Virus record (IMG/VR): IMGVR_UViG_3300025536_000010
Location: 124,001 to 188,000 of that record
Strand: one strand, 5' to 3'
Length of the DNA: 64,000 nucleotides
The position numbers and the translations under genes were made by a program. Under the pieces are notes generated by a model that saw nothing but the letters and a program-made list of their open reading frames with translations, searched no databases and had not been told where the DNA came from. This document shows, piece after piece, positions 572 to 31,072 of this stretch (its first letter is position 1; the number at the start of each line of letters is the position of its first letter).

Positions 572-1054
572 ATGGCCACCGTCGTCGACTACGAGAACCG
601 GACTGCCGACCTGTCCGCCTTCCAGGGCGTGTTCCCGCATCTGCGTGGGCGTGAGCAGCTGCTGGCCCACGAACTGGTGCGGACCACGGACGGCGGCAGC
701 CTGGTCACCGGCGTCCTCAAGGGTGTCCAGCGCTTCCTCGTCATCCTGCTGACGCCGCGCGGCTCGAAGCTCTACCGACCCTCCGAGGGCACCTTTTTCA
801 TGACCGAGGCGCGGTTGGGGGCCTGGCGTACCCCGGCAGACGTCTCGACGGCGTTCTACGCCGCCCGCCTGCTAGCGGCCCGCCAGATGCGTGAAGTCGA
901 ACTGACCACGGACCCGCCCGACGAACGCTATGGTGTGGCGACCCTGAACGGGGTTACCCTGGTGGCCGATAAGGTGTCGATTCGCGTGGACTACGAAAGT
1001 CTGGCCGGCACCAAGGTCACCGTGATAACCCCGATTCAGGTGCCGATCAAATGA
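572..1054 (+). CDS. gp25/GPW-like baseplate wedge protein
   Basis: VQRFLVILLTPRGSKLYRPSEGT resembles the gp25 LxTxxGxRxxxPxxG motif; lies upstream of baseplate J-like gene. Confidence 0.7.
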   Translation: MATVVDYENRTADLSAFQGVFPHLRGREQLLAHELVRTTDGGSLVTGVLKGVQRFLVILLTPRGSKLYRPSEGTFFMTEARLGAWRTPADVSTAFYAARLLAARQMREVELTTDPPDERYGVATLNGVTLVADKVSIRVDYESLAGTKVTVITPIQVPIK

Positions 1055-1524
1055 TTGCGGACCTCCTGACGGACCTGTACCAGCCGGAGGCGAAGATCAT
1101 TAAACAACTGTACCAGCGCCACACGGATACCAGCGACCCAACGAAAGGTGACTGCTTTGCAACCTGCGTGGCGATGATCCTGGGTCTGCAACAAGACGAA
1201 GTACCTAACTTCTGCGGCATTGCGACGGACTGGTGGCCTGGGTTCCAGAAATGGTTAGAGGAGCGACACCTAGTCGCTATCGAGGTCAACCTGCCGCCTC
1301 CTCCCTGGAAAAACCTTGGGGCGCTGACACCAGGCGTGCCCGTCATCCTCACAGGTAAAAGCCCAAGGGGTGATTGGTTGCACTCGATTGTTGGCATGAC
1401 GCGGTGGGATGAAGGGTTTGAGATACTCTACGACCCACACCCGGCTGGTGGCGGGTTTGATGGGCCACTCAAACATGTGCTGTTCTTTGCAGCGCTCAGA
1501 CCAGACAAGGCAGGGAAGCCATGA
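1051..1524 (+). CDS. small papain-fold (C39-like) Cys-His-Asp protein
   Basis: GDCFATCVAMILG...WLHSIV...YDPHP; ATGA overlaps at both ends; visibly lower GC than flanks. Confidence 0.55.
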   Translation: MIADLLTDLYQPEAKIIKQLYQRHTDTSDPTKGDCFATCVAMILGLQQDEVPNFCGIATDWWPGFQKWLEERHLVAIEVNLPPPPWKNLGALTPGVPVILTGKSPRGDWLHSIVGMTRWDEGFEILYDPHPAGGGFDGPLKHVLFFAALRPDKAGKP

Positions 1525-3173
1525 TCGAACTCCGGCCGTTCTCGCAGCTGAATCCCGACGACGTGGCCCAGCAGCACGCTGAGGCCCTCCAGCGCGTCCA
1601 GGAGGACAACCCCAAGCTGGACCTGCGTCGAGGCGTATTCGCCGACCTCCTGATATACTACCATTCGATCCTGGCAGGCCAGGGTCAGATGAACATCAAA
1701 GACTACTGGCGGGCGCGCAGCCTCCAGGCGATGGAGGCCGACCCGGACCTGGCCACGGCCGACCCAGACCTGGTCGGCGACGTGATTTCTAACTTCAACG
1801 TCGCCCGGCAACCAGGGGCCAAAGCAACAGGCGAGGTCACCATCGTCGTTACCGACAGCATCACGGTGACCATCGGCATCGGGGCTGTTTTCGAGGCCCA
1901 GGGCCTGCGTTTCATTACCACGCGCGTCTTCACTGGCAAAACCTCCGGCCGGATCGACGACCCCGGCGACCGTTTGCTCACTCAGACGGCAGACGGTAAC
2001 TGGGCGTTCACCATCGAGGTCCAGGCCGAACAGGAAGGCGAGCAGTACCAGATCAAGAAGGACACGCTAATCGTACCGCTGGTGCTACCGCTCAACTATC
2101 GAACCTCGTTCGCCGCCAATGATTTCGAGGGCGGCTACCAGGCCGAGACGAACCAGGACTTGCTGCTGCGGCTCCAGGAAGGCGTAGCGGCGCGCGGCCT
2201 GGGCGGGCGCATCAACCAGACGGCCACGCTGCGCGCCGTCGAAGATTTCTCCAGAGTCATCGCCGTCTCCGTGGTCGGCTACGGGGACGCCGAGATGCTC
2301 CGCGACAAACACTGGGTTTTCCCGATCTCCGGCGGCGGCCGTGTCGATTGGTACGTCCGCAGCCAGGAAGAAGTGTTCCGCAAGAAACTGCTCAAAGAGG
2401 CCACGCTAATCTCCAAAACGGACAGCGGCGTCGGCACCTGGCAGGTTAGCATCGGCCGCGACGAGGCCCCTGGCTACTACGAGATCGACAACATCCGTCC
2501 CAAGGACTCCGGTAACGCAGTCGGCGGCTTCGAGATCCTGACGGACGAGCGCGTCGCCGACTTGACCGGCCCCGGGTTCGTCCCGGACGTCTTGGCGGAC
2601 AGCGACGAGTGGGTCTACACCCGCTTCCAGGCCGGTGTCGTCCAGTTCGTCGATACCGTGCAGAGCGCTGCGGCCCTGGCGCTAGGAGCCAAGCGTGAGT
2701 ACGAGCTAGAGGCCCGCTGTCTGCCTCTGGTCGCCGAGATCCAGGACACGTTCAGTACGCCGGACAGCCGACCCAAACCTTACGACTTGCTGGTCAAAGC
2801 CCCGGTGCCGTGTTTTCTCAACCTGACCTTCACTGTTTACAAGCGCTCCGGCGAGGCCGACCCGGACCTGGCAGCCATGAAAACGGCGCTATGTACGGAG
2901 GTCAACAGCGTTGGTTTCATAGGGCGGCTGTTCGCTAGCCAGCTGCACGACGTTATTCACGCTTATCTGCGGAACGACCAGACCGCTTCCGCCATCGACA
3001 TGTTTGGGCGTATCCGGTATCCTAGTGGTGAACCCGAATACGTCCGTGACAGCGAAAAACTCGAAGTACCGGACGACCCGGTAGCGCTGGTGAGTGCCAG
3101 GACGGTGCAGTTTTTCATCAGCCCCGAGGACATCAGTATCTCGGTCGAAACGTCTGTGCCGTCGAGTCTGTGA
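1521..3173 (+). CDS. baseplate J-like protein
   Basis: NFNVARQPGAKATGEVTI, VQAEQEGEQYQI, GGYQAETNQDLLLR, GGRVDWYV motifs typical of baseplate J/gp47. Confidence 0.8.
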   Translation: MIELRPFSQLNPDDVAQQHAEALQRVQEDNPKLDLRRGVFADLLIYYHSILAGQGQMNIKDYWRARSLQAMEADPDLATADPDLVGDVISNFNVARQPGAKATGEVTIVVTDSITVTIGIGAVFEAQGLRFITTRVFTGKTSGRIDDPGDRLLTQTADGNWAFTIEVQAEQEGEQYQIKKDTLIVPLVLPLNYRTSFAANDFEGGYQAETNQDLLLRLQEGVAARGLGGRINQTATLRAVEDFSRVIAVSVVGYGDAEMLRDKHWVFPISGGGRVDWYVRSQEEVFRKKLLKEATLISKTDSGVGTWQVSIGRDEAPGYYEIDNIRPKDSGNAVGGFEILTDERVADLTGPGFVPDVLADSDEWVYTRFQAGVVQFVDTVQSAAALALGAKREYELEARCLPLVAEIQDTFSTPDSRPKPYDLLVKAPVPCFLNLTFTVYKRSGEADPDLAAMKTALCTEVNSVGFIGRLFASQLHDVIHAYLRNDQTASAIDMFGRIRYPSGEPEYVRDSEKLEVPDDPVALVSARTVQFFISPEDISISVETSVPSSL

Positions 3174-3189
3174 CACAAGGAGGTGTACA

Positions 3190-4134
3190 GTGGTGGCGAT
3201 GGCCAATCGTAAAGCGGTCGACCTGCTCGTTGGACACATGAGCAAGTCGACCCGCACCATGTCTCGCACGTTCCGGGCCTACGAGCCCGATGAGCGTGTC
3301 GCCAACTTTAGCCTCTCGTACCTCGACGCTTTCGGCTATCTCAAGAACGAGCTTGAGAAGTGGAAAGACATCACCCTGGGCGACATCGTCGAAGCGGTGA
3401 AAGACTTCCAGGGCATGTTCGGCCTGCGCAAGAGCGGCCAGGTGTGCGTGAAGACCGTGCGGGCGATGGAGATGCCGCGCTGCGGCTGCCCGGATCACGT
3501 CCGCCCGTGGCAGAACTACGCGGCCGTGCGCAACTTCGCCAGGGCCAACCTGGCCAAGTGGCAGAAAGACAACCTCAAGTACGGTATCCAGGATTACCTG
3601 CCGGGGCTCTCAAAACCAGATTTTGAGAGTATCATCTACCAGTCCTTCCAGGCGTGGTGCCGCTACGGCCACGTCCAGGTCGAGCCGGTGCGGATGAACG
3701 AGCGCCCCGACATTATCATCGCAACCGGCCGTGGGCGCCAGTCGAACTTCGACGGCCCCGGCGGTACGCTGGCGTGGGCTTACTTGCCCAACGGCAACGA
3801 TCAGCAGCTGACAATGAAGTTCGACCTGGACGAGACGTGGACGCAAGACCCGACCATGCGCGGTGTTTTGCTCGACGCCGTCGCCAAGCACGAGTTCGGC
3901 CACCTGTTCGGGCTCGACCACAGTCGCGTCCAACAGGCACTCATGGCTGCCTACTACAACCCGGCGGTGCGGAACCCTCAGCAGAACGACGACATCCCTC
4001 GGTTCCAGGCCCGCTACGGCGTCAAGCAACCCGGCGACGACGGTGGCACGACCCCGCCTCCGTCTGGCAACAACCGCCGACTCATCCTTGAGGGAGTTTT
4101 CAGCGCCACGCTGGACGGTCAGAAGGTGGCGTAA
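3190..4134 (+). CDS. matrixin (M10) zinc metalloprotease with PG-binding-like prodomain and cysteine switch
   Basis: AVKDFQGMFGL, MEMPRCGCPD, FDGPGGTLAWAYLP, FDLDETW, HEFGHLFGLDHS, Met-turn ALM; SD AAGGAGG just upstream of GTG 3190 (ATG 3199 is an alternative start). Confidence 0.9.
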   Translation: MVAMANRKAVDLLVGHMSKSTRTMSRTFRAYEPDERVANFSLSYLDAFGYLKNELEKWKDITLGDIVEAVKDFQGMFGLRKSGQVCVKTVRAMEMPRCGCPDHVRPWQNYAAVRNFARANLAKWQKDNLKYGIQDYLPGLSKPDFESIIYQSFQAWCRYGHVQVEPVRMNERPDIIIATGRGRQSNFDGPGGTLAWAYLPNGNDQQLTMKFDLDETWTQDPTMRGVLLDAVAKHEFGHLFGLDHSRVQQALMAAYYNPAVRNPQQNDDIPRFQARYGVKQPGDDGGTTPPPSGNNRRLILEGVFSATLDGQKVA

Positions 4135-4145
4135 GGAGGGCCGGT

Positions 4146-5720
4146 ATGCGGCACCTCGTTCTCTTCCTGCTGCCGGTGCTAGCCAGCATTGCCCTGCTCG
4201 CACCGGCGCAGGAGGTCAGGCCCGTAACGCGCCCTGACCCTCCAGTCGAGAAACAGCCAGATCCGGCGATCGCGCGTCTCCGCGAAAGCGTCCAACCCGA
4301 GTTCCTTGAGTGGAGCCCGGACTACGTCGTGGAGCGCTGCGCCGAGTTCCTGGCCACGATCAACGAGAAAGACCGCTACCGCATTCGCCTGTTCAGCTTG
4401 GCCGACGTGCCCCGGCAGTACCTGCCGGCGGCCATCGCCGGTCTGTACTTCGGCACGAACAAAGTGGCCCGGGTGCCGTTCACCCAGGTTCCACGGCCAG
4501 TGCCGAACACGGACAACCGGATCTTCTGGGTTGACCTCTGCTGGTTCAACTGGAGCTATGAGGCGTGGGAGGCCGCGAGCGAGGAAGACCCGTACTTCCG
4601 TGAACCCATCGTCAGCAGTCACAACGAGGGCCTGAAATACCTCAAAGAACAAACGCGGGCCAACCCAGTCATCCGCGGTGACTGGTTCCTGTGGTACACC
4701 TTCGACAACACCGAGTTCCTGAAAGTCGGCGAGACGTTCAACGAGAAAGCGTTCTACTACCGCTTCCTCTACGCCAACGTCGAGTTCGAGCGCACGGTCG
4801 CCGAGAACGGCAAAACCGTCAAGAAAAAGGTGCGCGGTGTCGGCCCAGCCAACGCCCACGAGTTCCAGCAGGCATGGCTGGTCGAGTTCAGTCACCTGAA
4901 AGACTTTCCGACCGACATGGGTTTCATGGTGGACAAGCGTCGCTCGGGCGTGTCCTACGAGAACCGCATCGGTTGGCGGGTCCGCGGCAAGAACGGCAAC
5001 TACTGGCGCACCTTCGACGTGCTGCGCTCGGTCGGCGACCAGGACTTCGTGGAGACGCCCTTCCCGAAGCTGTTCGATGCCGGCGAGCACATCTTCCAGG
5101 ACGTGCGCGGCAACCAGGTTTACCACCTGACCAACGGGGCTGACAAGTCGACGGACATCGGCGACCCGCGTATCGTCCGTGACCATACCTCGGGCGCCCG
5201 CGTGCTGATGACCGCCGGGTCGTGCATCCATTGCCACGATACCGGCATCATCCCGTTCAAGAACGAACACCTGGTTCTGCAAGACATCGGCGACCAGCTG
5301 ATGGCTTACGATAAGGCCCGAGCAGATCGCTTCAAACAGTTCTATCTCCAGGACCGGCGTATGAAGCTGGCCGTGGAGGAGGACCAGCGGAACTTCACGG
5401 AGTTCATCAAGGACTGCAACGGGCTGACACCGCAAGAAAACGCCACGCAGTTCAGCCGTATCCGCGGTTGGTACATGCAGGACGTGACGCTCAAGCAGGC
5501 CGCCCGCGAACTGGGTGCGGGGATCGAAGAGTTCTCGGACGCCATTGGTTACCAGGCGACCAAGGGCCGTCTAGGCCGCCTGGTACTGGACGGGCGGGCA
5601 ATCCCGCGCTACACCTGGGAGCGCGGCGGCTTCCAGGAGGCCGGGCTGCTCTTGATTGAGTGGCGAAAAATGACGAAAATGGAACAAGATAAGCTCAAGG
5701 AAGGACGGCGTAACTACTAA
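4146..5720 (+). CDS. exported protein with a single CxxCH (putative c-type cytochrome)
   Basis: Signal peptide MRHLVLFLLPVLASIALLAPA; FDAGEHIF...GSCIHCHDTG; SD AAGGAGG. Confidence 0.75.
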   Translation: MRHLVLFLLPVLASIALLAPAQEVRPVTRPDPPVEKQPDPAIARLRESVQPEFLEWSPDYVVERCAEFLATINEKDRYRIRLFSLADVPRQYLPAAIAGLYFGTNKVARVPFTQVPRPVPNTDNRIFWVDLCWFNWSYEAWEAASEEDPYFREPIVSSHNEGLKYLKEQTRANPVIRGDWFLWYTFDNTEFLKVGETFNEKAFYYRFLYANVEFERTVAENGKTVKKKVRGVGPANAHEFQQAWLVEFSHLKDFPTDMGFMVDKRRSGVSYENRIGWRVRGKNGNYWRTFDVLRSVGDQDFVETPFPKLFDAGEHIFQDVRGNQVYHLTNGADKSTDIGDPRIVRDHTSGARVLMTAGSCIHCHDTGIIPFKNEHLVLQDIGDQLMAYDKARADRFKQFYLQDRRMKLAVEEDQRNFTEFIKDCNGLTPQENATQFSRIRGWYMQDVTLKQAARELGAGIEEFSDAIGYQATKGRLGRLVLDGRAIPRYTWERGGFQEAGLLLIEWRKMTKMEQDKLKEGRRNY

Positions 5721-5731
5721 GGAGGTCAGGG

Positions 5732-6484
5732 ATGACCGGAGCGCTCTTTCTGGCCCTGGCGCTCACGCCGGGTCAACACTGTTACTCGCCTCGGCCGGTG
5801 TACGGGTACTACAACAACTACTACCCGCAGACCTACTACCAGCCGGCGCACCAGGCGTACTACCCGCAACACCAGCCGGTCTACCCGGCCCAGAAAGTTA
5901 TCGCGCAAGATATTGCCGTGGCCCCGTTAATCGTTACGGTGCCCGTGGACTCGAAAGCGGTGCCGGTGCATGCGCACGGCTCGCCCTATTACTACTCGGC
6001 CAGCGACGCCTACCGCGAGAAGGCGTACCTCCGCGAAGTAATCCGCGAGGAACTGCGCGCCCTGGCTACCGGCAACGTGCCGCAGCAGAACACGCAGCCC
6101 GTACAACGGCAGCCGCAGCAGCAGGCGCAGCCGCCGGTCCAGCAGAACCAACCAGTCGTTGAACAGCAGCGCCTGGACGACGAGACGCCGATGGAGATCC
6201 AGACGCAAGTGCTGGCGGCCTACAACGGTACGGGCAAATGCGTCGAGTGCCACGGTGGCTCCGAGAAAGCGTCGGGGCGGCGTGGCCGCGAGTTCCGCCT
6301 GGTGCTGGACACAGAGAACGGACCACGGTTGGCATACCAACCGCCGGCCAAGCGTTGGGAGATCTACGGCATGGCCTCGGCCGGTGCAATGCCGCCGGCT
6401 GCCGCCAAAGACGCAGCCAAGGCGATGGAGACGAAGTTCCTGTCGATCATGCTCCAGTACGCCAGCTACAAGCCGCAGCAGTGA
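5732..6484 (+). CDS. exported protein with Y/Q/P-rich linker and planctomycete-type cytochrome c domain
   Basis: Hydrophobic N-terminus; KCVECHGG followed by distal AGAMPP (possible Met axial ligand); SD AAGGAGG. Confidence 0.7.
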   Translation: MTGALFLALALTPGQHCYSPRPVYGYYNNYYPQTYYQPAHQAYYPQHQPVYPAQKVIAQDIAVAPLIVTVPVDSKAVPVHAHGSPYYYSASDAYREKAYLREVIREELRALATGNVPQQNTQPVQRQPQQQAQPPVQQNQPVVEQQRLDDETPMEIQTQVLAAYNGTGKCVECHGGSEKASGRRGREFRLVLDTENGPRLAYQPPAKRWEIYGMASAGAMPPAAAKDAAKAMETKFLSIMLQYASYKPQQ

Positions 6485-6516: not shown

Positions 6517-7194
6517 ATGAGCAAGAAGATTTTCGGACTGGGCCTGCTGATTTTCGGACTGGCAAGCCTTTGTCTCGTAAGCGACGCGGACGCCCGCGGT
6601 GTCCTCAGTCAGAGGAGCCAGCGGACCACGATTACCAGCCGCAGCAACGGTTTCCGCGACGTGCAGCGGATTCAGACGACCACGCGCAGCGGGTTCCTGG
6701 GCCTGAACCGCCGGCAGGAGAGCCTCACGATCATCAACGGCAACCGCGGCTTCCAGGAGGTACGGTTCCAGGATCGCGGCAGGCTTGGGCGCAACCGCGT
6801 CGACGAGATTCGTTTCCAGACCGGCCCGGCCTATGTAAACCAGCAGCTGCTGATCGACAACCACGCACGGCAGCGGCTTTTGCTGAATCGGCAGCACAGC
6901 TTTACGCACGCCCCCAGGAACAACGTGGCGAACATTCGCTTTATTGACCGGGGGCCAGTGTACCTGAACGCACCGCCTATTACGCGGGCGGAGATCCGGC
7001 AGGAATATGTCTACCGGCAACCAGCACAGGTAATTGAGCGGGTGGAGGTCGCTCCGCAGACTGCGGCGGACTGTGACTGCGAGCAGGTCGGTAACGCTCA
7101 GTACCAGACGGAAGCTATCGTGACGCGGCGCTACACCTACAGCCCGCAGCTGGCGCTCGAACGACGGCAGTTCATGCAGCACCACTGCCGCTAA
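6517..7194 (+). CDS. exported Arg/Gln-rich hypothetical protein
   Basis: SD AAAGGAG then MSKKIFGLGLLIFGLASLCLVSDADA signal peptide with AxA site. Confidence 0.75.
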   Translation: MSKKIFGLGLLIFGLASLCLVSDADARGVLSQRSQRTTITSRSNGFRDVQRIQTTTRSGFLGLNRRQESLTIINGNRGFQEVRFQDRGRLGRNRVDEIRFQTGPAYVNQQLLIDNHARQRLLLNRQHSFTHAPRNNVANIRFIDRGPVYLNAPPITRAEIRQEYVYRQPAQVIERVEVAPQTAADCDCEQVGNAQYQTEAIVTRRYTYSPQLALERRQFMQHHCR

Positions 7195-7229: not shown

Positions 7230-7265
7230 GGGGCGGGCGGGACAACCCGCCTGCCCCTTTTCTTT
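7230..7265 (+). terminator. intrinsic terminator
   Basis: GGGGCGGGCGGG-ACAA-CCCGCCTGCCCC stem followed by TTTTCTTT. Confidence 0.8.
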
Positions 7266-7276
7266 GGGAGGCACGG

Positions 7277-7645
7277 ATGCCTAAAGCGATCCCCGTGGTG
7301 GACCCCAAGGATCAGGACAAGATCAACGGCTGGGCGGTCGAGTGCCCAGCCTGCGGGAACTGCCACGTTTTCGATCTGGTACGCTGGAAGTTCAACGGCG
7401 ACGTCGAGAAGCCGACGTTCGCGCCGTCCATGTTGGTGCAGAGCGGACACTACTCGAAGTTTCACAAGCCCGGCGAAACGTGCTGGTGTGACTACAACAA
7501 AAAGAATCCCGACAACCCGGGTTTCGAGTGCAGCCGCTGCCACAGCTACCTGCGCGACGGCGTCTGGGAGTATCTGAACGACTCGACGCACGCGCTGAAA
7601 GGACAGAAGGTGCCCGCCCCGGACTGGAACTTGCCCCAACCCTAA
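7277..7645 (+). CDS. DUF6527-like Cys/His (probably Zn-binding) protein
   Basis: CPACGNCH...WKFNGDVEKPTFAPSML...CHSYLRDG...THALKGQ. Confidence 0.7.
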   Translation: MPKAIPVVDPKDQDKINGWAVECPACGNCHVFDLVRWKFNGDVEKPTFAPSMLVQSGHYSKFHKPGETCWCDYNKKNPDNPGFECSRCHSYLRDGVWEYLNDSTHALKGQKVPAPDWNLPQP

Positions 7646-7663
7646 AAAGTGGATTTTGGAACC

Positions 7664-9190
7664 ATGCCGTACAAGTTCCCCGCTTCGGACCTCGATTCCG
7701 CCCAAACGCTGCTGGCCTCGGTCGGTGGCTTCTGGAACGGCGTCTACCAGGGTTCCTTCCTGGTCGAGAGCCTGCTCTACGCCCGCGCCCGGTTAGAGGA
7801 ACAGACCCACCTCGACTTCCTGGAACTGCTGGCCTCGGTCAGCCGTTTCAAACTGCCGGTCTTCCATACGGACGTCTGGTACTTGCTGACGCTCAAAGAG
7901 AGCGAGCGGAACCAGGCCGAGGCCAACCTGGCTAAGTTCGACGGCACTTACACCTTCGAGAGCGGTATCGAGTACGACGTGCCGGTGGACACAGAGTTCC
8001 ACGTTTGGCAACTGCCCGCGGGCTTAGTGAACTTCAACCTGGCGCTCAACCGTATCACGGCTTCCAGCGTTAGCCTGGCCAAAGGCGTCGATTACTTCCT
8101 CAAAGACGGGGCCGTCTGGTTCCGCCAGAACCCCTTCGAGAACGACTTGGTCGCCAAGCGCGAGGTCTTCGAGGACGGCGTCATCACCGACCGCGAATGC
8201 GGCCTGTGGCTCTATCGCGGGCAGTGGGACTGGGACGCGGTCTACACCCAGTTCTCCTACGCGCTGGGTATGAAACTCAAGTCCTCCCAGGCTGCCAAGG
8301 ATCTCGTCAACGCGATCTTCGACGCCCTCACCCTGGGCTGCACCGACCGCTACCTCAACCGGGCCTTCTCGGCTGTCTGCGGCGTACCCTTGGCCAAGGG
8401 CGCGGAGACGGTCGAGCACACCTACACCGACCGCCGCGGCCTTTGGGTCGTAACGGACAAAAACGTCTATCGCTTCCACCAGGACGCCAACCTGCTTGTC
8501 GACGTCGGCGACGCCCTGGTCGAGGGCCAGGCGCTCACGGACGCCCTCCGCTTTTTCGAGTTCGGCCGCGGCCAGGTGCCCAGCGAGATCCGGGCGCTGT
8601 CGGTCGGCAAGGGTCTGCTAGCCGAAGGCTATTTCCAAGATCTCGTTTTCGAGAACAAAGAAGTCTCCACGGAGATCGACGAGGACCAGACCTGGACCCG
8701 CCTGACTTTCGAGGTCGGCGGTTTTCCGCTCGACGTGCAAAAGTTCTGGGACGACGTTCACCGCAAGGGCGTGGAGAGCGGACAGACCCTGGCCATGCTC
8801 CTGGACCGGCGGACCAACAAGACGGGCCAGCCCAAGGCGGCAGCGTTACCGCTGACGATCAACCCGCTGGGTTTCTTGCTCCAGAACGTGTTCCGCAACA
8901 ACCTCTTTGTGGTCCTGATCCGAGCCAACTGCCTCGGCCCTGATGCCTTGGGGCTCCAGCATGCCCGTTTCCTGCGCCGGATTCTGCCGCCGCACACCTG
9001 CTGTATCGTGCTGGCGCAGCTAGAAGCGACCGATGAGGTTACTATGGACGGACCAGGAGATGAAACAACTCCCGGTTACGAGGAAGACCTGGGCGTCTTC
9101 CTGGGACTCACCAACACCGAAGAAGTCGAAGGCCCGGACCAGATCGAAGAAGAACTGCGTGTCTTCCAGATCAACGGCCGCTGCCAATAG
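7664..9190 (+). CDS. putative baseplate/tail structural protein
   Basis: ~508-aa acidic ORF in the tail module; C-terminal LRRILPPHT resembles wedge-protein PAH-type motifs. Confidence 0.6.
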   Translation: MPYKFPASDLDSAQTLLASVGGFWNGVYQGSFLVESLLYARARLEEQTHLDFLELLASVSRFKLPVFHTDVWYLLTLKESERNQAEANLAKFDGTYTFESGIEYDVPVDTEFHVWQLPAGLVNFNLALNRITASSVSLAKGVDYFLKDGAVWFRQNPFENDLVAKREVFEDGVITDRECGLWLYRGQWDWDAVYTQFSYALGMKLKSSQAAKDLVNAIFDALTLGCTDRYLNRAFSAVCGVPLAKGAETVEHTYTDRRGLWVVTDKNVYRFHQDANLLVDVGDALVEGQALTDALRFFEFGRGQVPSEIRALSVGKGLLAEGYFQDLVFENKEVSTEIDEDQTWTRLTFEVGGFPLDVQKFWDDVHRKGVESGQTLAMLLDRRTNKTGQPKAAALPLTINPLGFLLQNVFRNNLFVVLIRANCLGPDALGLQHARFLRRILPPHTCCIVLAQLEATDEVTMDGPGDETTPGYEEDLGVFLGLTNTEEVEGPDQIEEELRVFQINGRCQ

Positions 9191-10096: not shown

Positions 10097-11932
10097 ATGT
10101 CCTTTGAACGCTTCCTCACACTGGTACAGGAGAGGGACCGGGTTAAAGCCGGGACGGTCAACAAACCGCTCCGCACCACGGACCAGAACGTCCGTTACCT
10201 GTGGGACGTCCTCCAGGCCGCCGGCATCGGCTCGACCGTCTACCTGCACCGGCAGACGGTGGAGCCCGAAGTCCACAAGGGCATGGCTGTCTGGCTCAAC
10301 CCGGACACCACGCGCTTCGAGCGCTGCCTGGCCTTCGCTGACGTCGACGGCGCCACGGGCGTCGTTTACACGGCCAACTCGGCTCAGGTCTGGGGCGTCG
10401 TCACGGAGAAGATCAACGCCACGCTGGCCGAGATCCTCTTGTTCGGCGTTGTTGACCTGAACCTGTCCGAAGCCGTTGCCGACAGCGACGACCTGGGGCC
10501 GGGCGTCTACTACCTCTCGTCCAGCCAGCCCGGCAAGCTGACGCGGCAGAAGCCACCTGTCTCGGTGGCCGTGCTGCGCGCCACCACGGACGGCAAGGTG
10601 TTCGTGATGCCGCAGTTCGTGGACTTCCTCGACCGGCACACGCACTACCGTTTCAGCTTGACCTGCGCCCCGGCTGGTGACACGACGCCGCCGGCTCCGG
10701 GCGGCACACACGCGATCACCAGCCCCAACGTCCTGACGCAAGGTTGGCTGCCGGCTGGACACAGCAGCTTCAACGGTAAAGCCCCGCCCGGAGCCGTCTT
10801 TGGCTACAACCTGGAAGCACACACGGCCCTCAAGAACCTGTGGCCGCCTCAACCGTTCAACAACGCCTACCTGGAGTTCGACCGCGGCGAAGACTCGGCC
10901 CTGGGCTTCATCGGCGTGCCGCTGGGCAGCAACGGCCTGTGCGTCGCCGACCGTTATGGCATCTGGTGGATGTCCAACTGCTACGGGGACGTGCCCTGGC
11001 CTACAGCGCTCGACACCGAAACGTCTGACAGCTACTCGGACTCTTCCGATGTGGAGTGCCCGCGGCATCTCCAGATGGCCATGCAGCTGTGGTTCACCAA
11101 GATCAATTTTGCCACCGACTTGACGTCGGTACTGTCGCTGCATTCGGGCGACAACCGCATCCGAGTCCGCTGCTACGGCAAGCCTGACCAGGTGGCCAGC
11201 ACCGGGCACCTAGAACTGTTCCTCAACCTGAACCTGGTGGTCAAGGACGACCAGCCTGGCTACCTGGCTTTCAAAGACTTCGACCCGGAGAAAGCAGAGT
11301 TCAAACGCGGCCCGGTGGTGGAAGGCTTCTACAAGCTCTCCAACAACGTCACCCTGGTCGGCACCAAAGTCGGCGAGCGCGAGATCGGTGACACCACCTA
11401 CGATCTCTACCAGGGCTTGGTCGGTATCGCTGTGGCCCCGGAAGAGACGCTCGAACTGCCGGTGCAGCTGGTACGGCTCAAAGGCGTCGAGGAAGACTTC
11501 TTCCAGGATCTGATGTATCTGGCCTTCCGCCCAGCTGTCCAGGAGGAATACCGCGCCAAGCTCGTCGTGCCGTCGGATCTAGCTATCCCCAACCCGCAGA
11601 TGAAGATCCGCATGGCGATTATGGGCCGCGCGGCCGGCACGCTGCCGGTCCTCACGGTAACGGCGCGCCGTGCCGCCAGACCCGAGGACGGCCTGGGTAC
11701 GCCGCTGTCCCTGCCGCTGACTGGCGCAGAGTTCTCGGTCACCATCGACACCCAGGGCGTACTGACCCTGGCAAACCAATACGTCGAGGCCGAGAGCGAA
11801 CCGTTTGACGTCGCGCCAGGGGATACAGTGTTTTTCACCGTCAGGCGCCTGGCCACGGACGGCTACGGAGCCGACGTGGGTATCCTGCGGCAGTCGGGCA
11901 TTTTGCTTTCAGGAGAAGACGATGAGGATTAG
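10097..11932 (+). CDS. putative tail structural protein
   Basis: 611 aa; SD AAGGAGG; GVYYLSSSQPGKLT motif seen in virion proteins. Confidence 0.65.
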   Translation: MSFERFLTLVQERDRVKAGTVNKPLRTTDQNVRYLWDVLQAAGIGSTVYLHRQTVEPEVHKGMAVWLNPDTTRFERCLAFADVDGATGVVYTANSAQVWGVVTEKINATLAEILLFGVVDLNLSEAVADSDDLGPGVYYLSSSQPGKLTRQKPPVSVAVLRATTDGKVFVMPQFVDFLDRHTHYRFSLTCAPAGDTTPPAPGGTHAITSPNVLTQGWLPAGHSSFNGKAPPGAVFGYNLEAHTALKNLWPPQPFNNAYLEFDRGEDSALGFIGVPLGSNGLCVADRYGIWWMSNCYGDVPWPTALDTETSDSYSDSSDVECPRHLQMAMQLWFTKINFATDLTSVLSLHSGDNRIRVRCYGKPDQVASTGHLELFLNLNLVVKDDQPGYLAFKDFDPEKAEFKRGPVVEGFYKLSNNVTLVGTKVGEREIGDTTYDLYQGLVGIAVAPEETLELPVQLVRLKGVEEDFFQDLMYLAFRPAVQEEYRAKLVVPSDLAIPNPQMKIRMAIMGRAAGTLPVLTVTARRAARPEDGLGTPLSLPLTGAEFSVTIDTQGVLTLANQYVEAESEPFDVAPGDTVFFTVRRLATDGYGADVGILRQSGILLSGEDDED

Positions 11933-18512: not shown

Positions 18513-21500
18513 ATGGCAGACCACCCGGCGTTCGACCCCACCAAATGCGACGTGGAGCCGGTCGAGCGGATTCCCTGCGAAGACCTGCTCGTCGATCCGC
18601 GCGTGCCGGACCCGCCGAAAGAGATCCCGGACTGCCCAGCGACCGAGATCGAGAAGCTGCCGCCGGACCCGCCCTGCCCGGAGTTGAACGTCAAACGGCA
18701 CCCGGATTTCCCGTCGCCGCAAGTGCCGGCGTACATGGACCACGACATCTGCGAAACGCCCAAGTTAAACTTCAAAATCGAGAAGGTCGGCTGCTGCGAC
18801 TTTGATTTTGTCATCGACCTGTGCATCCCTTGCCCGGACCTGGAACCGCTCTACCCGTTCATTAAGGGCGTGCCTTTCACGTTCAGCGAGTCGACGCTGA
18901 CCTACGGCTTCATCCGCAAGCCAAACTGCGACTTCGAGTTCAGGATCGACCTGGAGATCCACTGTCCGTTTATCGGCCCGCTCGGGTTCGCCGTGAACAA
19001 GGGGGTACGTTACGGCCCGGCGCTGCTGACGTACAGCTTCTCCAAAACGGGAGCTTGCGATTATTTCCTGAACATCGACGTCTCCGTGCCTTGCCCGGCC
19101 GTTGGACCTATTTTTCCTGGCGAAGTGACGCCCATTCCTTTCAACGGCGTCAGCACGCTCGGCTTCCTCGTCTACTGGTTCAATCGCGGCGTAAACTGCA
19201 ACTACGATCTGGACATTTTTGCGGCAGCGCCGTGCCCGCCTATTGGCCCAAACGAGCCGCTGACCAAGCTGATCCCGTACAGCAAGCAGCAGACGATCCG
19301 CTACTACATGAGGCGTGCGCAAAACCCGGACGGCTCGCCGAAGTGCGAGTACGAACTCATCATCGACGCCCGCATCAAGTGCCCGCGCATCGAGCCGATC
19401 AACCTCAAGACGGTGCCGCTGACCCAGGTAAACACTGCGCCCAAGCTGCGCTACATCTTCCTGAAAAACGAGACGACCTGCGAATACGAACTGGTTATCC
19501 AGGGCGAATACCACTGCCCGAAGATGCTGCCAGACATCGCGGCGCCGCAGGTGCGGCCGATCCCGTTCGGAGCGGTGCAGCAGATCGTCTACTTCTTCCG
19601 CAAGCAAGGCATCTGCGACTACTTCCTGGACATCAACGCCAACATTATCTGCCCGCCGATGAAGCCAGAGGTCTGGAAGAACGTCAACCTCCAGCTGGTG
19701 CAGGTGCCGCCCAAGCTGCGCTTCCGCTTCGTCAAGATCCCGCCCTGCGGCTGGGAGTTGGAGATCGAAGGCGAGTGGCACTGCCCGATCATCAAACCTA
19801 TCGAGGCGGCCAAGGGCGAGCGCGGCGTCAAATTCGGCGACCCGGGGCAGATCCGCTGGTGGTTCGTCAAGATACTGCCCTGCGAGTTCGAGTTGAAAAT
19901 CGAACTCGACGTGCCGTGCCCGATCCTCAAACCCATCGTCGAACAAGAAGTCGACCTGGTCAAAGTGTTTGAGGCGCCCAAGCTATTTTTCAAGTTTGTC
20001 AAAGACCCCGCCGCCGATAAGTGCGAGTTCACCCTGGACATCTCCGGGGAATGGTTCTGCCCCATCGTGGACCCGCCGGAAGACGCCCCCGGAGTCGCGC
20101 CGCTAGGCGGCGGCGCGGGCGGCGAAATACGCTGGTGGTTCAGACGGGAAGCGCCTTGCCACTACGAGCTAATCATCGAAGGCGAGTGCCCCTGCGTAGT
20201 CATGCAGCCGGTCGACTTGACCAGCATACCGATCACCTTCACGAACAACGACGAAGGCTGGTTCGACTTCTATTTCGAGAAAGACCCGGACGACTGCATC
20301 TGGACGCTCGTCGTAGAAGAGATCCGCGTGCCGTGCCCCAAGATCGGGCCGACCGTGCTCGTCACCAAAGACGTTCACCCGGAGGACGTGCCCGGAGCCT
20401 TGGGCACGCTGGAGTATGTGTTTGTCAAAGCCGGAGCCGGCTGCCAGTACGACCTGGAAATCGACCTCATCACTCCTTGCCAGGAACACCTGCCCGATTG
20501 CGCGGCACCCGACGTCAAGCCAGTCCTCTGTTCGGGAACGTGCGAAGGCGAGTTGACCTACTGCTTCACGAAATACAACGAGTGCGATTACGATCTCAGC
20601 ATCGACGTCACCGTGCCGATCTGTCCGCCGGTCTGTACCTTCGACATCGAGATAAACTGCCACGACGAACCGTTTACGCCGACCGGCACCTGCGATGTTA
20701 CCGTCGTCAACGGTTGCGAACTCCAGTTCGACATGGTCTTGGACCTGGTCTGCGGCGGCGACGGCGATCAAGGCGCACAGGGGCATCAAGGCGCGCAAGG
20801 TGGAGCCGGCGGTGCCCAAGGACCACAAGGCCACCAGGGCGATCCTGGCGCTCAAGGCGATCCTGGCGACCCCGGACCACAAGGCGATCAGGGGCACCAA
20901 GGCGACCAGGGCGAAAAGGGCTGCGGCACCTGGCAAGGCCAGTGGCTGGCGGCTACCGCCTACGCAGCGTGCGACATCGTCTTCAACGACGGTGAGACGT
21001 TCCTCTGCACCGACGACCACACCTCGGCAAGTGGTGATGAGCCCGACATAGGAGCAACCTGGGCGACCAAATGGGACCGCATGGCCACCGGCATCAACTG
21101 GCGCGGTCCCTGGACAACGGCGACTGTCTACGGCGAGCACGACGCTGTCGAGAACAACGGCTCGTCCTACATCGCCAAGCTGACGCACACTTCCAGTGCG
21201 GGCACGGAACCTGGCGTGGGCGGCGGCTGGAACGTCGCCTGGGATCTGATGGCGGCCAAGGGAGCACAAGGCGCACAAGGCTCCCAAGGTGACCAAGGCA
21301 ACCAAGGTGTCCAGGGCAGGCAAGGCAACCAAGGCTTCCAAGGAAATCAGGGCACCCAAGGCTTCCAAGGGAATCAGGGCCTCCAGGGCCTCCAGGGCTC
21401 GACCGGCTCCAAACTGGCCATCGTGCCCTACTGGGACGAGTACGTTGCCCTGGCCTGCGTCGAAGCCCCCGAAGTACGCTTCGAGGACATCTTGCGAGTG

Positions 21501-21809
21501 CAGTTCAGCGGCGACCACCGCGACACGGTCATCGTTGACATTGACCCGGTATTTCTCGGCGTCTGCGAACCTGGTAGCATCGTTCCCGTCTCGGCTGTAC
21601 CCGCAACGCCGATCCCGGTTGGCGTGCAGGTCTGCGGCGGGCTAGTTTACGTCCGCGTCACGCGGAGCAGCGCAACGCCGCGCTTTCAAGGCGAAGTGAT
21701 TGTAAAACTGTCGGGCATCCGGCGGGATCACACCTGGCGCTTCCGGCGGCATACCGAAGACGACATGGTCGCCAACAACGCCTTCTGGCAAGGCTGGAAA
21801 AAGGAGTAA
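18513..21809 (+). CDS. tail fibre: ~15 Cys repeats, collagen-like segments, two CBM5/12-like modules, C-terminal chaperone-like domain
   Basis: C-x11-CP repeats; GxQ triplets ~20764-20920 and ~21261-21410; WQGQWLAATAY..D.V and WRGPWTTATVY..DAV; LACVEAPEVRFED. Confidence 0.8.
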   Translation: MADHPAFDPTKCDVEPVERIPCEDLLVDPRVPDPPKEIPDCPATEIEKLPPDPPCPELNVKRHPDFPSPQVPAYMDHDICETPKLNFKIEKVGCCDFDFVIDLCIPCPDLEPLYPFIKGVPFTFSESTLTYGFIRKPNCDFEFRIDLEIHCPFIGPLGFAVNKGVRYGPALLTYSFSKTGACDYFLNIDVSVPCPAVGPIFPGEVTPIPFNGVSTLGFLVYWFNRGVNCNYDLDIFAAAPCPPIGPNEPLTKLIPYSKQQTIRYYMRRAQNPDGSPKCEYELIIDARIKCPRIEPINLKTVPLTQVNTAPKLRYIFLKNETTCEYELVIQGEYHCPKMLPDIAAPQVRPIPFGAVQQIVYFFRKQGICDYFLDINANIICPPMKPEVWKNVNLQLVQVPPKLRFRFVKIPPCGWELEIEGEWHCPIIKPIEAAKGERGVKFGDPGQIRWWFVKILPCEFELKIELDVPCPILKPIVEQEVDLVKVFEAPKLFFKFVKDPAADKCEFTLDISGEWFCPIVDPPEDAPGVAPLGGGAGGEIRWWFRREAPCHYELIIEGECPCVVMQPVDLTSIPITFTNNDEGWFDFYFEKDPDDCIWTLVVEEIRVPCPKIGPTVLVTKDVHPEDVPGALGTLEYVFVKAGAGCQYDLEIDLITPCQEHLPDCAAPDVKPVLCSGTCEGELTYCFTKYNECDYDLSIDVTVPICPPVCTFDIEINCHDEPFTPTGTCDVTVVNGCELQFDMVLDLVCGGDGDQGAQGHQGAQGGAGGAQGPQGHQGDPGAQGDPGDPGPQGDQGHQGDQGEKGCGTWQGQWLAATAYAACDIVFNDGETFLCTDDHTSASGDEPDIGATWATKWDRMATGINWRGPWTTATVYGEHDAVENNGSSYIAKLTHTSSAGTEPGVGGGWNVAWDLMAAKGAQGAQGSQGDQGNQGVQGRQGNQGFQGNQGTQGFQGNQGLQGLQGSTGSKLAIVPYWDEYVALACVEAPEVRFEDILRVQFSGDHRDTVIVDIDPVFLGVCEPGSIVPVSAVPATPIPVGVQVCGGLVYVRVTRSSATPRFQGEVIVKLSGIRRDHTWRFRRHTEDDMVANNAFWQGWKKE

Positions 21810-30865: not shown

Positions 30866-31072
30866 ATGATCCTGAACTTCTACCACCGCAACGGCAAGAA
30901 GGAACGACGCCCGCTCGGTTACGGCGGCGGCCTCTGCCACGAAGCCACCAAGCCGTACGAACGGCGGGAGATTCCCGGTCAGATGAGAAACACGCCCACG
31001 CCCGAGGCGTATCAGGAACCGGCCGACACCACAGGTGAATCGGTCGTCGAACGGCAGCAACTGCGAGGTTGA
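30866..31072 (+). CDS. DUF2997-like small protein
   Basis: GYGGGLCHEATKPYE...TPEAY; SD GAGGAG; lies between DUF1257-like and AAA genes. Confidence 0.55.
   Translation: MILNFYHRNGKKERRPLGYGGGLCHEATKPYERREIPGQMRNTPTPEAYQEPADTTGESVVERQQLRG

What the first reader, a model, noticed from the sequence alone, without database searches (positions are those of the whole stretch)
3190..4134. Complete MMP-style zymogen with cysteine switch in a phage tail region
Seen: a prodomain with PG-binding-like helices, PRCGCPD (canonical switch PRCGxPD), FDGPGGTLA, HEFGHLFGLDHS and a Met-turn, with no obvious signal peptide. Known: this is the architecture of latent eukaryotic MMPs. Inference: an activatable protease for lysis, entry through a protein-rich envelope or virion maturation. 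The switch Cys could be redox-triggered, which would link it to the neighbouring haem proteins.
Basis: partly seen in the sequence, partly recalled or inferred. Interest (0 to 1): 0.68.

Follow-up and report, generated by a model that had tools for sequence, protein, structure and literature searches.

The report
Latent MMP-like protease cassette in jumbo phage
A 235-kb phage from a subsurface metagenome encodes a complete, apparently self-inhibited relative of animal matrix metalloproteinases; it belongs to a phage-only branch of that family and sits in an optional gene cassette, often beside exported haem-type proteins, so it probably cuts host envelope protein once it leaves the cytoplasm.

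Summary
Window 3190-4134 (+) encodes a 314-aa protein with no signal peptide. It has an MMP-type prodomain, a PRCGCPD cysteine switch, FDGPGGTLA, HEFGHLFGLDHS and a Met-turn. It matches Pfam Peptidase_M10 over the full profile (104 bits). Its AF2 model superposes on latent proMMP-9/-3/-2 as one body (Z 23, rmsd 2.1 A).

It differs from a canonical MMP in five ways:
- The structural-zinc ligands are replaced.
- The switch is mostly C-G-C.
- There is no secretion signal.
- There is no hemopexin domain.
- A Pro-rich linker and a short beta-hairpin follow the catalytic domain.

In a tree, all signal-less phage pro-M10s form one clade, apart from Tat-signal phage M10s and from bacterial plus eukaryotic-virus MMPs. 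The best bacterial relative is 35% identical.

The gene is not a core tail part. Of 28 related phages with the same baseplate-J operon, 14 carry it directly after J and 14 lack it. Elsewhere the same clade lies near portal, terminase or replication genes. It is often linked to two exported CxxCH proteins, as it is here.

Best reading: an accessory late protease that is latent in the reducing cytoplasm and acts on the host envelope after release. The trigger and the substrate are inferred.

The parts
1521..3173 (+). Baseplate J-like wedge protein (550 aa). It is the core gene directly upstream of the cassette slot.
   Evidence: Pfam Baseplate_J E 5.6e-10 and phrog_6 E 4e-18. Homologues at 37-65% identity occur in 28 IMG/VR loci.
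3177..3183 (+). Ribosome-binding site AAGGAGG, 6 nt before GTG 3190.
   Evidence: Read directly from the sequence.
3190..4134 (+). Pro-matrixin (M10A-like) zymogen gene, 314 aa, with no signal peptide.
3190..3474 (+). Prodomain: an extra N-terminal helix plus a three-helix, PG_binding_1-like bundle.
   Evidence: AF2 helices 4-20, 32-44, 60-73 and 84-91 with pLDDT above 90. PG_binding_1 scores 21 bits. The region aligns to proMMP prodomains.
3475..3495 (+). Cysteine switch PRCGCPD. R and C are invariant; the second Cys is present in 79 of 121 homologues.
3556..4020 (+). Catalytic M10 domain.
   Evidence: Pfam Peptidase_M10 positions 1-159 of 159. Z 17-19 to MMP catalytic domains.
3748..3780 (+). 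FDGPGGTLAWA segment. The MMP calcium-site residues are kept. Trp replaces the structural-zinc His.
   Evidence: Alignment to proMMP-1. D185, G186, G189, D209 and E212 are invariant and W193 is at least 90% conserved.
3889..3924 (+). Catalytic zinc motif HEFGHLFGLDHS.
   Evidence: HExxHxxGxxH is present in 121 of 121 homologues.
3937..3957 (+). Met-turn (ALMAAYY).
   Evidence: A247, L248 and M249 are at least 90% conserved.
4021..4131 (+). Pro-rich linker and short C-terminal beta-hairpin. This may be a tether or docking element; its function is unknown.
   Evidence: AF2 strands 295-298 and 302-305 with pLDDT 75-81. The same layout appears in distant clade members, with an inserted extra ~100-aa segment in L045 and L048.
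4146..5720 (+). 524-aa exported protein ('P524'). It has an N-terminal signal peptide and one invariant CxxCH (nt 5223-5237), and may contain a cytochrome P460/c'-beta-like domain.
   Evidence: The signal peptide and CxxCH are present in all 15 homologues. The gene is linked to M10. VIA Z 4.1-5.8 to cytochrome c'-beta/P460 chains, which is weak. Atlas neighbours carry PSCyt1.
5732..6484 (+). 250-aa exported protein with a C-terminal PSCyt1-like mono-haem cytochrome c motif (CVECH, nt 6239-6253).
   Evidence: Pfam PSCyt1 E 0.054 and Cytochrome_CBB3 E 0.044, both sub-threshold. Homologous small CxxCH proteins follow P524 in 9 loci and in 12 of 15 loci.
6517..7194 (+). 225-aa secreted protein of unknown function. 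It is the last gene of the inserted unit.
   Evidence: N-terminal signal-like sequence and an RBS. There is a 30% identical homologue in L033.
7230..7257 (+). Strong intrinsic-terminator-like hairpin that closes the unit.
   Evidence: 12-bp stem with 11 G-C pairs, followed by a T-run. This is a pattern match only.
7649..9190 (+). 513-aa protein, the next core gene of the baseplate operon. In relatives without the cassette it follows J directly.
   Evidence: Synteny J-513-200-611-318. In L139 and L132-137, J is followed directly by its homologue.

Best explanation
Window 3190-4134 encodes a genuine, probably active, pro-matrixin made without a signal peptide.

How it is held latent. A four-helix prodomain places an invariant Arg-Cys-Gly-x-Pro-Asp segment in the active-site cleft. 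The Cys thiolate would block the catalytic zinc bound by HExxHxxGxxH, so the enzyme is latent while it sits in the reducing cytoplasm of the infected cell.

What kind of gene it is. It is the anchor gene of an accessory, moron-like cassette inserted between baseplate J and the next core baseplate gene. It is co-oriented with the late operon and separated by only 11-16 nt from its neighbours. In this phage it travels with three Sec-type exported proteins, two of them CxxCH (c-type-cytochrome-like) proteins.

Most likely mechanism (inferred). The zymogen accumulates late in infection. It leaves the cytoplasm when the inner membrane is breached at lysis, or less likely on the virion. The switch then opens in the oxidising envelope compartment. 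In most family members this could happen through a Cys-Gly-Cys disulfide, possibly helped by the exported haem proteins. The enzyme then cuts a protein or peptide component of the host envelope to aid release.

Shown: identity, latent-type architecture, phage-specific clade, accessory status, gene linkage.
Inferred: time and place of action, trigger, substrate.
For: Identity and latency
- Pfam M10 matches the full profile at 104 bits.
- proMMP-1 is the best PDB sequence hit, and the alignment covers the switch.
- The AF2 model has pLDDT 88.7. It superposes on proMMP-9/-3/-2 at Z 23 and rmsd 2.1 A over 210-225 residues spanning prodomain plus catalytic domain (Foldseek E 4.5e-15).
- The switch R/C and the zinc ligands are invariant in 121 homologues.

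Latency goes with cytoplasmic synthesis
- Among viral M10s, 30 loci combine a switch with no signal peptide. The short clade has Tat-like signals and no prodomain.

Phage-specific clade
- In the tree the signal-less pro-M10 clade has SH-aLRT 92, and its core has 99. It is separate from bacterial and eukaryotic-virus MMPs.
- The best bacterial hit is 35% identical. There is no GenBank phage hit.

Accessory status
- M10 follows J in 14 of 28 related operons. In the others J abuts the next core gene.
- The cassette lies near portal/head protease, TerL or a DnaC loader in other phages.
- A terminator-like hairpin lies at 7230-7257.

Action outside the cytoplasm
- The linked genes all encode signal-peptide proteins: P524, the small cytochrome c, the 6517-7194 product, and in sister phages a secreted Peptidase_C1 protein, small TM proteins and a lipoprotein.
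- P524 lies within 6 kb in 15 of 35 clade-I loci and 0 of 45 others. Reciprocally, 10 of 15 P524 loci carry an M10.

Other
- No canonical endolysin family was found in the 235-kb genome in 10 family searches.
- The C-x-C switch occurs only in this clade: 79 of 121 family members, 12 of 35 clade-I loci, 0 elsewhere.
Against: - There is no experimental data of any kind. Activity, latency, timing and location are all inferred.
- No holin, spanin or endolysin family was recognised in or near the cassette.
- M10 enzymes are not known peptidoglycan or lysis enzymes.
- The haem pair also occurs without M10 (L142, L144, L147), and M10 occurs without the haem pair (L034-37, L036/40/50). The link is therefore frequent, not obligate.
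- The complex prediction for M10 with P524 gave no answer.
- The conserved C-terminal linker and hairpin, and the position inside a baseplate operon, would also fit a virion-tethered enzyme.
- The host is unknown.
- The endolysin absence rests on 10 Pfam families only.
Confidence: 0.4

Rival explanations
1. Virion-borne entry enzyme. The zymogen is tethered to the baseplate through its Pro-rich linker and C-terminal hairpin. It is carried out latent and fires on the next cell's surface, digesting a proteinaceous surface layer or wall protein during adsorption and penetration.
For: - The gene lies directly after baseplate J, with a 16-nt gap, in 14 related phages.
- The linker plus hairpin is conserved across the clade, with an inserted extra ~100-aa segment in L045 and L048, as in tethered enzymes.
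- The protein has no signal peptide, as expected for a protein assembled in the cytoplasm.
- Latent virion enzymes have a precedent in T4 gp5 (own knowledge).
- Sister phages carry a second protease in the same slot (Peptidase_C1).
Against: - The gene is absent from half of the phages with the same baseplate operon.
- In other phages it lies in portal, terminase and replication neighbourhoods.
- Its conserved partners carry Sec-type signal peptides and so cannot be virion parts.
- It matches no PHROG structural family.
Confidence: 0.25
2. It is the phage's endolysin proper. The PG_binding_1-like prodomain serves as a cell-wall-binding module, and the metallopeptidase cuts peptidoglycan peptide stems or cross-links after holin action.
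For: - This gene holds the only PG_binding_1-like segment in the genome.
- No lysozyme, transglycosylase, amidase, M15 or NlpC/P60 family was found. M23 appears only below threshold.
- There is no signal peptide, as in canonical endolysins.
- The type-ii cassette carries small TM proteins and a lipoprotein with a lipobox.
Against: - The PG_binding_1 match is below its cut-off, and MMP prodomains give the same match.
- The invariant Cys switch sits in the cleft as in proMMPs, which argues for an inhibitory prodomain rather than a binding module.
- No M10 member is known to cleave peptidoglycan (own knowledge).
- The gene is optional among close relatives, whereas an endolysin should be universal.
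Confidence: 0.12
3. Intracellular or phage-directed protease. The switch is released allosterically or by processing inside the cell. The enzyme then cleaves host proteins (takeover or counter-defence) or matures phage proteins, for example the collagen-like tail fibre encoded 14 kb downstream.
For: - The protein is made in the cytoplasm.
- A cytoplasmic bacterial zinc peptidase, CapP, uses a ligand-released cysteine switch (bioRxiv 10.64898/2026.05.16.725639).
- The window encodes a 1098-aa fibre with two G-X-Y collagen-like runs.
Against: - All linked cassette genes are exported proteins.
- Co-occurrence with collagen-like fibres was not tested.
- MMP-type calcium-site residues are conserved, which fits an extracytoplasmic enzyme better (own knowledge).
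Confidence: 0.1
4. A fitness or moron gene unrelated to the infection mechanics. For example, the protease is released at lysis and works with the exported haem proteins to remodel the surroundings, exclude other phages or free nutrients.
For: - It has a patchy, cassette-like distribution with its own terminator-like end.
- A separate phage clade of Tat-exported M10s shows that phages often carry secreted M10s.
- A phage-derived metzincin plus partner pair in Listeria alters the cell wall and lysis sensitivity (PMC8235301).
Against: - The record looks like a lytic jumbo phage, and the clade was not found in any of about 185,000 bacterial species genomes. A lysogenic-conversion role is therefore unlikely.
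- Strong conservation over deep divergence suggests a role in the infection cycle itself.
Confidence: 0.08

Closest known systems
Vertebrate pro-MMPs (proMMP-3 1slm, proMMP-9 5th6/5ue3, proMMP-2 1ck7, proMMP-1 1su3)
   Same: - Prodomain bundle, PRCGxPD switch and catalytic domain are in the same mutual arrangement (Z 23, rmsd 2.1 A, about 30% identity).
- HExxHxxGxxHS, the Met-turn and the FDGPGG calcium-site residues are shared.
   Different: - No signal peptide and no hemopexin domain.
- The structural-zinc ligands (His/Asp/His/His by MMP-1 numbering, own knowledge) are replaced by R/Q/W/K.
- There is an extra N-terminal helix.
- The switch is mostly C-G-C.
- A Pro-rich linker and C-terminal hairpin follow the catalytic domain.
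- The gene is encoded by a phage.
Bacterial pro-matrixins (e.g. Actinomadura kijaniata L005, Burkholderiales MAG L006) and karilysin of Tannerella forsythia (2xs4, 4r3v)
   Same: - They are prokaryotic M10A-like enzymes.
- L005, L006, L009 and L010 also have a PG_binding-like prodomain and a PRCGxPD-type switch.
- The karilysin catalytic domain matches at Z 17.7.
   Different: - Identity is at most 35%.
- The bacterial proteins keep the structural-zinc His residues (HGDG..LAH..LHFD).
- In the tree they group with eukaryotic-virus MMPs, not with the phage clade.
- None has a P524 neighbour.
- Karilysin has only a short propeptide (own knowledge).
MMPs of insect viruses (iridovirus, nudivirus, ascovirus, granulovirus, entomopoxvirus)
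   Same: They are virus-encoded M10 enzymes and the best BFVD structural hits (Wiseana iridescent virus G0T5G2, E 1e-15).
   Different: - They are secreted, with signal peptides (L083, L085, L101, L104, L107).
- They fall in a different clade.
- They act on animal tissue (own knowledge).
Listeria Mtz/Tim: a secreted metzincin plus TIMP-like lipoprotein pair of phage origin
   Same: It is a phage-associated metzincin encoded next to an exported partner. Its expression alters the cell wall and enhances phage-mediated lysis (PMC8235301).
   Different: - Mtz is secreted.
- Its partner is a TIMP-like lipoprotein, not a CxxCH protein, and the metzincin cleaves that partner.
Phage M10-annotated proteins in databases (uncultured Caudovirales A0A6J5RTD2 and A0A6J5P205; Maribacter phage Colly_1 matrixin)
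   Same: They are phage-encoded M10-like folds. A0A6J5RTD2 aligns over the full length (TMq 0.55).
   Different: Sequence identity is only 11-17% (17% for the two Caudovirales proteins, 11% for Colly_1). I found no study of them. There was no tblastn hit in 50,697 GenBank phage records.

Membership tests
Matrixin, MEROPS M10A / Pfam PF00413 | Full-length profile match above the curated cut-off | tested here: met
   103.9 bits against a cut-off of 24, positions 1-159 of 159. Confirmed on the genome.
Matrixin, MEROPS M10A / Pfam PF00413 | Zinc motif HExxHxxGxxH followed by Ser, plus a Met-turn | tested here: met
   HEFGHLFGLDHS and ALMAAYY are present. H231, E232, H235, H241 and S242 are invariant and M249 is at least 90% conserved.
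Matrixin, MEROPS M10A / Pfam PF00413 | Prodomain with a PRCGxPD cysteine switch lying in the active-site cleft | tested here: met
   R94 and C95 are invariant and D99 is present in 119 of 121. The switch aligns to PRCGVPD of proMMP-1. Prodomain plus catalytic domain superpose on proMMPs as one body, Z 23.
Matrixin, MEROPS M10A / Pfam PF00413 | Structural (second) zinc site in the S-loop (His, Asp, His, His) | tested here: not met
   The aligned positions are R/Q/W/K in the window protein and contain no His in the family consensus. W193 is at least 90% conserved. Bacterial relatives keep these residues.
Matrixin, MEROPS M10A / Pfam PF00413 | Structural calcium site (FDGxGG ... FDxDE) | tested here: inconclusive
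   The ligand residues D185, G186, G189, D209 and E212 are invariant. Metal binding itself cannot be tested here.
Matrixin, MEROPS M10A / Pfam PF00413 | Secretion signal, as in eukaryotic MMPs | tested here: not met
   No hydrophobic N-terminus in the window protein or in 113 of 121 homologues.
Matrixin, MEROPS M10A / Pfam PF00413 | Latent proteolytic activity released by thiol modification or prodomain removal | not testable with these tools
   Needs enzyme assays.
Core baseplate / tail structural protein | Present in all phages that share the homologous baseplate operon, and matching a structural family | tested here: not met
   Present in 14 of 28 J-homologous loci. No PHROG match.
Phage endolysin / virion-associated peptidoglycan hydrolase | Catalytic domain of a known muralytic family, plus a wall-binding domain and adjacent holin/spanin genes | tested here: inconclusive
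   M10 is not a known muralytic family. PG_binding_1 scores 21 bits, below its cut-off of 23. Neighbouring TM and lipoprotein genes in sister phages match no lysis PHROG. No other endolysin family was found in the genome.
Moron-like accessory cassette | Patchy presence at a fixed slot, different neighbourhoods in other phages, and its own transcription signal | tested here: met
   14 of 28 loci carry it at the J slot. In other phages it lies near portal, TerL or DnaC genes. A terminator-like hairpin lies at 7230-7257 (pattern only). No promoter signal above chance was found.

The most novel reading that the evidence does not exclude
This could be a redox-gated viral protease system. The exported P460/c'-beta-like protein and the PSCyt1-like c-type cytochrome would oxidise or nitrosylate the Cys-Gly-Cys switch of the signal-less pro-MMP once the two compartments mix. 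That would fire an envelope-degrading protease at a defined moment of lysis or entry. It would be a phage counterpart of the oxidative and NO-driven activation of mammalian proMMPs, and the first protease in a virus controlled by a cytochrome.
Probability: 0.12. Interest if true: 0.85.

Novelty: new variant of a known kind. Interest (0 to 1): 0.62.

Why it matters
Complete cysteine-switch zymogens are usually treated as a hallmark of eukaryotic MMPs. Here the whole latent architecture is conserved across a deep, phage-only clade. At least 322 proteins in the metagenome database and 116 IMG/VR stretches encode M10 relatives of the query (not all of this clade). The clade has its own traits:
- a C-x-C switch
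- no structural zinc
- no signal peptide
- a tether-like C-terminal tail

This bears on the debated origin and horizontal spread of MMPs (PMC12587646 does not mention phages).

It also offers a small, bacterially expressible model of cysteine-switch latency.

Finally, it points to an unstudied way in which phages attack protein components of cell envelopes, possibly coupled to phage-encoded c-type cytochromes, which are themselves unusual. If the enzyme is a lysis or entry tool, it would be a new class of phage envelope-degrading enzyme.

Tried and rejected
- tblastn of the protein against 50,697 GenBank phage records found no match.
- PHROGs gave no family for M10, P524, the small cytochrome or the slot genes of sister phages. 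NCBIfam gave only a 19-bit local hit to a myxosortase-dependent metalloprotease.
- Complex prediction for M10 with P524 (aa 51-524) returned 'no answer' (score 0.00). This is not evidence either way.
- Foldseek of the P524 model against the PDB found nothing at E <= 0.001. A profile of P524 against PDB sequences also found nothing. Only weak VIA matches to cytochrome c'-beta/P460 appeared (Z 4.1-5.8).
- Alignment A2 was too divergent for a pattern scan, so the narrower alignment A4 was used instead.
- The sigma-70 promoter scan was not above chance.
- Host identification failed. There is no tRNA in the window, and the only run holding the DNA is a subsurface metagenome that is probably its source. 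The hints towards Planctomycetota or Myxococcota rest only on PSCyt1-like motifs and Atlas neighbours.
- I considered and rejected recent capture from a host or a eukaryote: identity is at most 35%, the clade is separate, and GC content is uniform.
- I considered and rejected a core baseplate protein.

Not done:
- The large representative protein search, because the protein was not left open by the cheaper searches.
- Cellular eukaryotic MMP sequences were not in the tree, because no tool supplied them. Eukaryotic-virus MMPs served as proxies.
- Model coordinates could not be read, so no Cys-to-zinc-site distance is given.
Full report
**1. Where we are**

The window is bases 124001-188000 of a 234,886-bp IMG/VR virus record that CheckV rates complete. 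GC content is an even ~62% across the window. There is no tRNA in the window. Nearly all long ORFs lie on the + strand. The only public run holding the DNA is a subsurface metagenome, probably its source.

The gene upstream of the finding, 1521-3173, is a Baseplate_J / phrog_6 wedge protein. A 1098-aa collagen-like tail fibre lies at 18513-21809. The finding is therefore inside the tail/baseplate module of a jumbo phage.

**2.

ORF and start:
- The ORF 3190 (GTG) to 4134 follows an AAGGAGG ribosome-binding site. ATG 3199 is an alternative start.
- The protein database holds the same 314-aa call.

Motifs: PRCGCPD, FDGPGGTLAWA, HEFGHLFGLDHS and a Met-turn are all present.

Profile and sequence matches:
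- Pfam Peptidase_M10 matches its whole length at 103.9 bits against a cut-off of 24.
- PG_binding_1 scores 21 bits, just under its cut-off. MMP prodomains give this kind of match too.
- The best PDB sequence hit is proMMP-1 (E 1e-29). The alignment runs from the prodomain through the switch to the end of the catalytic domain.

Structure:
- An AF2 model built on 120 homologues has pLDDT 88.7.
- Foldseek ranks proMMP-3, -1, -9 and -10 first (E 4.5e-15).
- VIA-align superposes prodomain plus catalytic domain on proMMP-9, -3 and -2 as one rigid body: Z 23, rmsd 2.1 A, 210-225 residues.
- The model therefore adopts the closed, latent arrangement.

**3. The family**

The word search found 322 relatives. 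The best 120 are listed, about 300-340 aa long and 43-69% identical, many on 100-240-kb contigs. Conservation across these homologues:

| Feature | Conservation |
|---|---|
| HExxHxxGxxH | all homologues |
| Switch R and C | invariant |
| Switch D | 119 of 121 |
| Met-turn | at least 90% |
| MMP calcium-site residues | invariant |

Three features depart from canonical MMPs:
- **Structural zinc.** The four structural-zinc ligands are replaced, and a Trp conserved in at least 90% of members sits where MMPs have the 'LAH' His. Bacterial pro-matrixins keep these His residues.
- **C-G-C switch.** The residue after Cys-Gly is a second Cys in 79 of 121 members, giving C-G-C. This occurs in 12 of 35 clade-I viral loci and in none of the other clades. 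From my own knowledge, C-x-C motifs readily form a disulfide, which would pull the thiolate off the zinc.
- **C-terminal tail.** The catalytic domain is followed by a Pro-rich linker and a ~20-aa beta-hairpin. This layout recurs in distant members, with an inserted extra ~100-aa segment in two of them.

There is no signal peptide.

**4. Relatives elsewhere**

- None of 50,697 GenBank phage records has a hit.
- In one genome for each of about 185,000 prokaryote species, the best relatives are only 27-35% identical: Actinomadura, a Burkholderiales MAG and several Planctomycetota MAGs.
- IMG/VR holds at least 116 stretches that encode a relative of the query.

A quick ML tree of 89 sequences gives three groups:

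| Group | Rows | Support (SH-aLRT) | Content |
|---|---|---|---|
| I | 44 (core 40) | 92 (core 99) | All signal-less phage pro-M10s, including this one |
| II | 22 | 98 | Short phage M10s with Tat-like RRxFL signals and no prodomain |
| III | 23 | 99 | Bacterial M10s, with and without a prodomain, plus eukaryotic-virus MMPs |

The gene is thus not a recent capture from a host or an animal. Cellular eukaryotic MMPs were not in the tree.

Across the viral M10s, a full prodomain with a switch goes with the absence of a signal peptide (30 loci). Exported enzymes lack the prodomain. This is what one expects if latency protects the cytoplasm.

**5. Not a core tail protein**

Close relatives share the gene order gp151 - gp160 - J - M10 - [variable genes] - 513 - 200 - 611 - 318.

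A survey with a J profile found 28 loci with J at 37-65% identity:
- 14 have M10 directly after J.
- 14 have none. In several of these (L139, L132-137) J is followed at once by the 513/200/611/318 homologues.

The M10 unit is therefore an optional insertion into a variable slot. In the window the unit is tightly packed, with 16, 11 and 11 nt between genes. It ends with a strong terminator-like hairpin at 7230-7257.

In other phages the same M10 clade sits between the portal and the head protease (L056), near TerL (L043), or near a DnaC-like loader (L090).

**6. Linked genes**

*The 524-aa protein (4146-5720).* It has a signal peptide and one CxxCH, and both are conserved in all 15 homologues aligned. 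An HMM finds such a gene within 6 kb of M10 in 17 of 79 viral loci. That is 15 of 35 non-redundant clade-I loci and none of the 45 loci in the other clades. None of the bacterial M10 loci has one.

*The small exported protein.* It usually follows the 524-aa gene and has a C-terminal CxxCH...MP motif. Here it is 5732-6484, with sub-threshold PSCyt1 and Cytochrome_CBB3 matches.

*Reciprocal search.* Of 15 loci found with the 524-aa family, 10 carry an M10 and 12 carry the small cytochrome. The association is frequent but separable.

*Fold of the 524-aa protein.* It has no Pfam, PHROG or PDB sequence match. Its model (pLDDT 80) shows weak but repeated similarity of residues ~233-410 to cytochrome c'-beta/P460 (Z 4.1-5.8, 5 of the top 12 rows). 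Atlas neighbours are phage clusters and Planctomycetota/Myxococcota proteins carrying PSCyt1.

*Sister phages.* These keep M10 after J but replace the haem genes with one of two sets:
- a secreted Peptidase_C1 protein (28 bits against a cut-off of 20.7) plus a secreted Cys-rich protein.

Every companion is an exported or membrane protein.

**7. Interpretation**

Firm:
- This is a latent-type pro-matrixin of a phage-specific clade.
- It is carried in an accessory cassette.
- Its companions act in the envelope.

Because the companions are Sec-exported, they cannot be virion parts. A signal-less zymogen can meet them only after the inner membrane is breached. I therefore favour a late, release-phase envelope protease whose switch opens outside the reducing cytoplasm (confidence about 0.4).

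The lack of any recognisable endolysin in 10 Pfam searches of the genome fits a role in lysis, but it is weak evidence.

A virion-tethered entry enzyme remains a serious rival (0.25), because of the baseplate position and the tether-like tail. Other rivals are an endolysin proper (0.12), an intracellular or fibre-processing protease (0.10; CapP shows that cytoplasmic cysteine switches exist), and a moron unrelated to infection mechanics (0.08).

The complex prediction for M10 with the 524-aa protein gave no answer and counts for nothing.

**8. Comparison and novelty**

The protein works like a proMMP and passes most membership tests for M10A. It fails the structural-zinc and secretion features.

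Phage M10-like proteins exist in databases. I found no study of them, and none of a phage cysteine-switch zymogen. The recent MMP phylogeny paper does not mention phages. The nearest functional analogue in the literature is the Listeria phage-derived metzincin plus partner pair, which sensitises cells to lysis.

I rate this a new variant of a known kind, with interest 0.62.

Noticed in passing
window 18513-21809 (+): A 1098-aa tail-fibre-like protein with two collagen-like G-X-Y runs (aa ~750-805 and ~915-965). Its N-terminal part holds about 15 repeats of ~45 aa, each with conserved Cys pairs. A collagen-like fibre and an MMP-like gene thus share one tail module.
   Followed up: partly
window 4146-5720 and 5732-6484 (+): Two phage-encoded exported CxxCH proteins. 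One may have a cytochrome P460/c'-beta-like domain and the other is PSCyt1-like. They form a pair that also occurs without M10 in other viral contigs (L142, L144, L147).
   Followed up: partly
window 1051-1524 (+): A 157-aa protein (phrog_5845, E 3e-23) with a GDCFATCVAMIL motif reminiscent of a cysteine peptidase. It is inserted between gp160 and baseplate J only in this phage and in L033/L038.
   Followed up: no
window 7230-7257 (+) and 7277-7645 (+): A strong terminator-like hairpin (12-bp stem, 11 G-C pairs, T-run) lies inside the baseplate operon. It is followed by a Cys-rich DUF6527 / phrog_3362 protein.
   Followed up: partly
window 6517-7194 (+): A 225-aa protein with a signal-like N-terminus and no family match. 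It is the last gene of the inserted unit, and L033 has a 30% identical homologue.
   Followed up: no
whole genome G000 (C1:1-234886); C1:68710-68925 and C1:77725-77892: No Phage_lysozyme, SLT, Amidase_2/3, GH19, GH108, M15_4 or NlpC/P60 family anywhere in the genome. The only hits are sub-threshold Peptidase_M23-like segments in two giant ORFs (1057 and 1412 aa) outside the window.
   Followed up: partly
L055, L057-L066, L071-L079, L092-L098 (IMG/VR loci): A separate clade of ~200-aa phage M10 enzymes with twin-arginine-like signals (RRxFL) and no prodomain. A few of them keep only a short RCGxxD segment right after the signal.
   Followed up: partly
L003:8965-10665 and 10712-11374; L127:9580-11861: In sister jumbo phages the slot after M10 holds different cargo. 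One version is a secreted papain-family (Peptidase_C1) protein with a PGPNPP-repeat linker plus a secreted Cys-rich protein. The other is two small TM proteins, a papain-like protein and a lipobox lipoprotein, which resembles a lysis cassette.
   Followed up: partly
window 31035-33044 (+): A 669-aa protein matching phrog_8638 (E 1e-55) and ATPase phrog_10401. It is unrelated to the finding.
   Followed up: no
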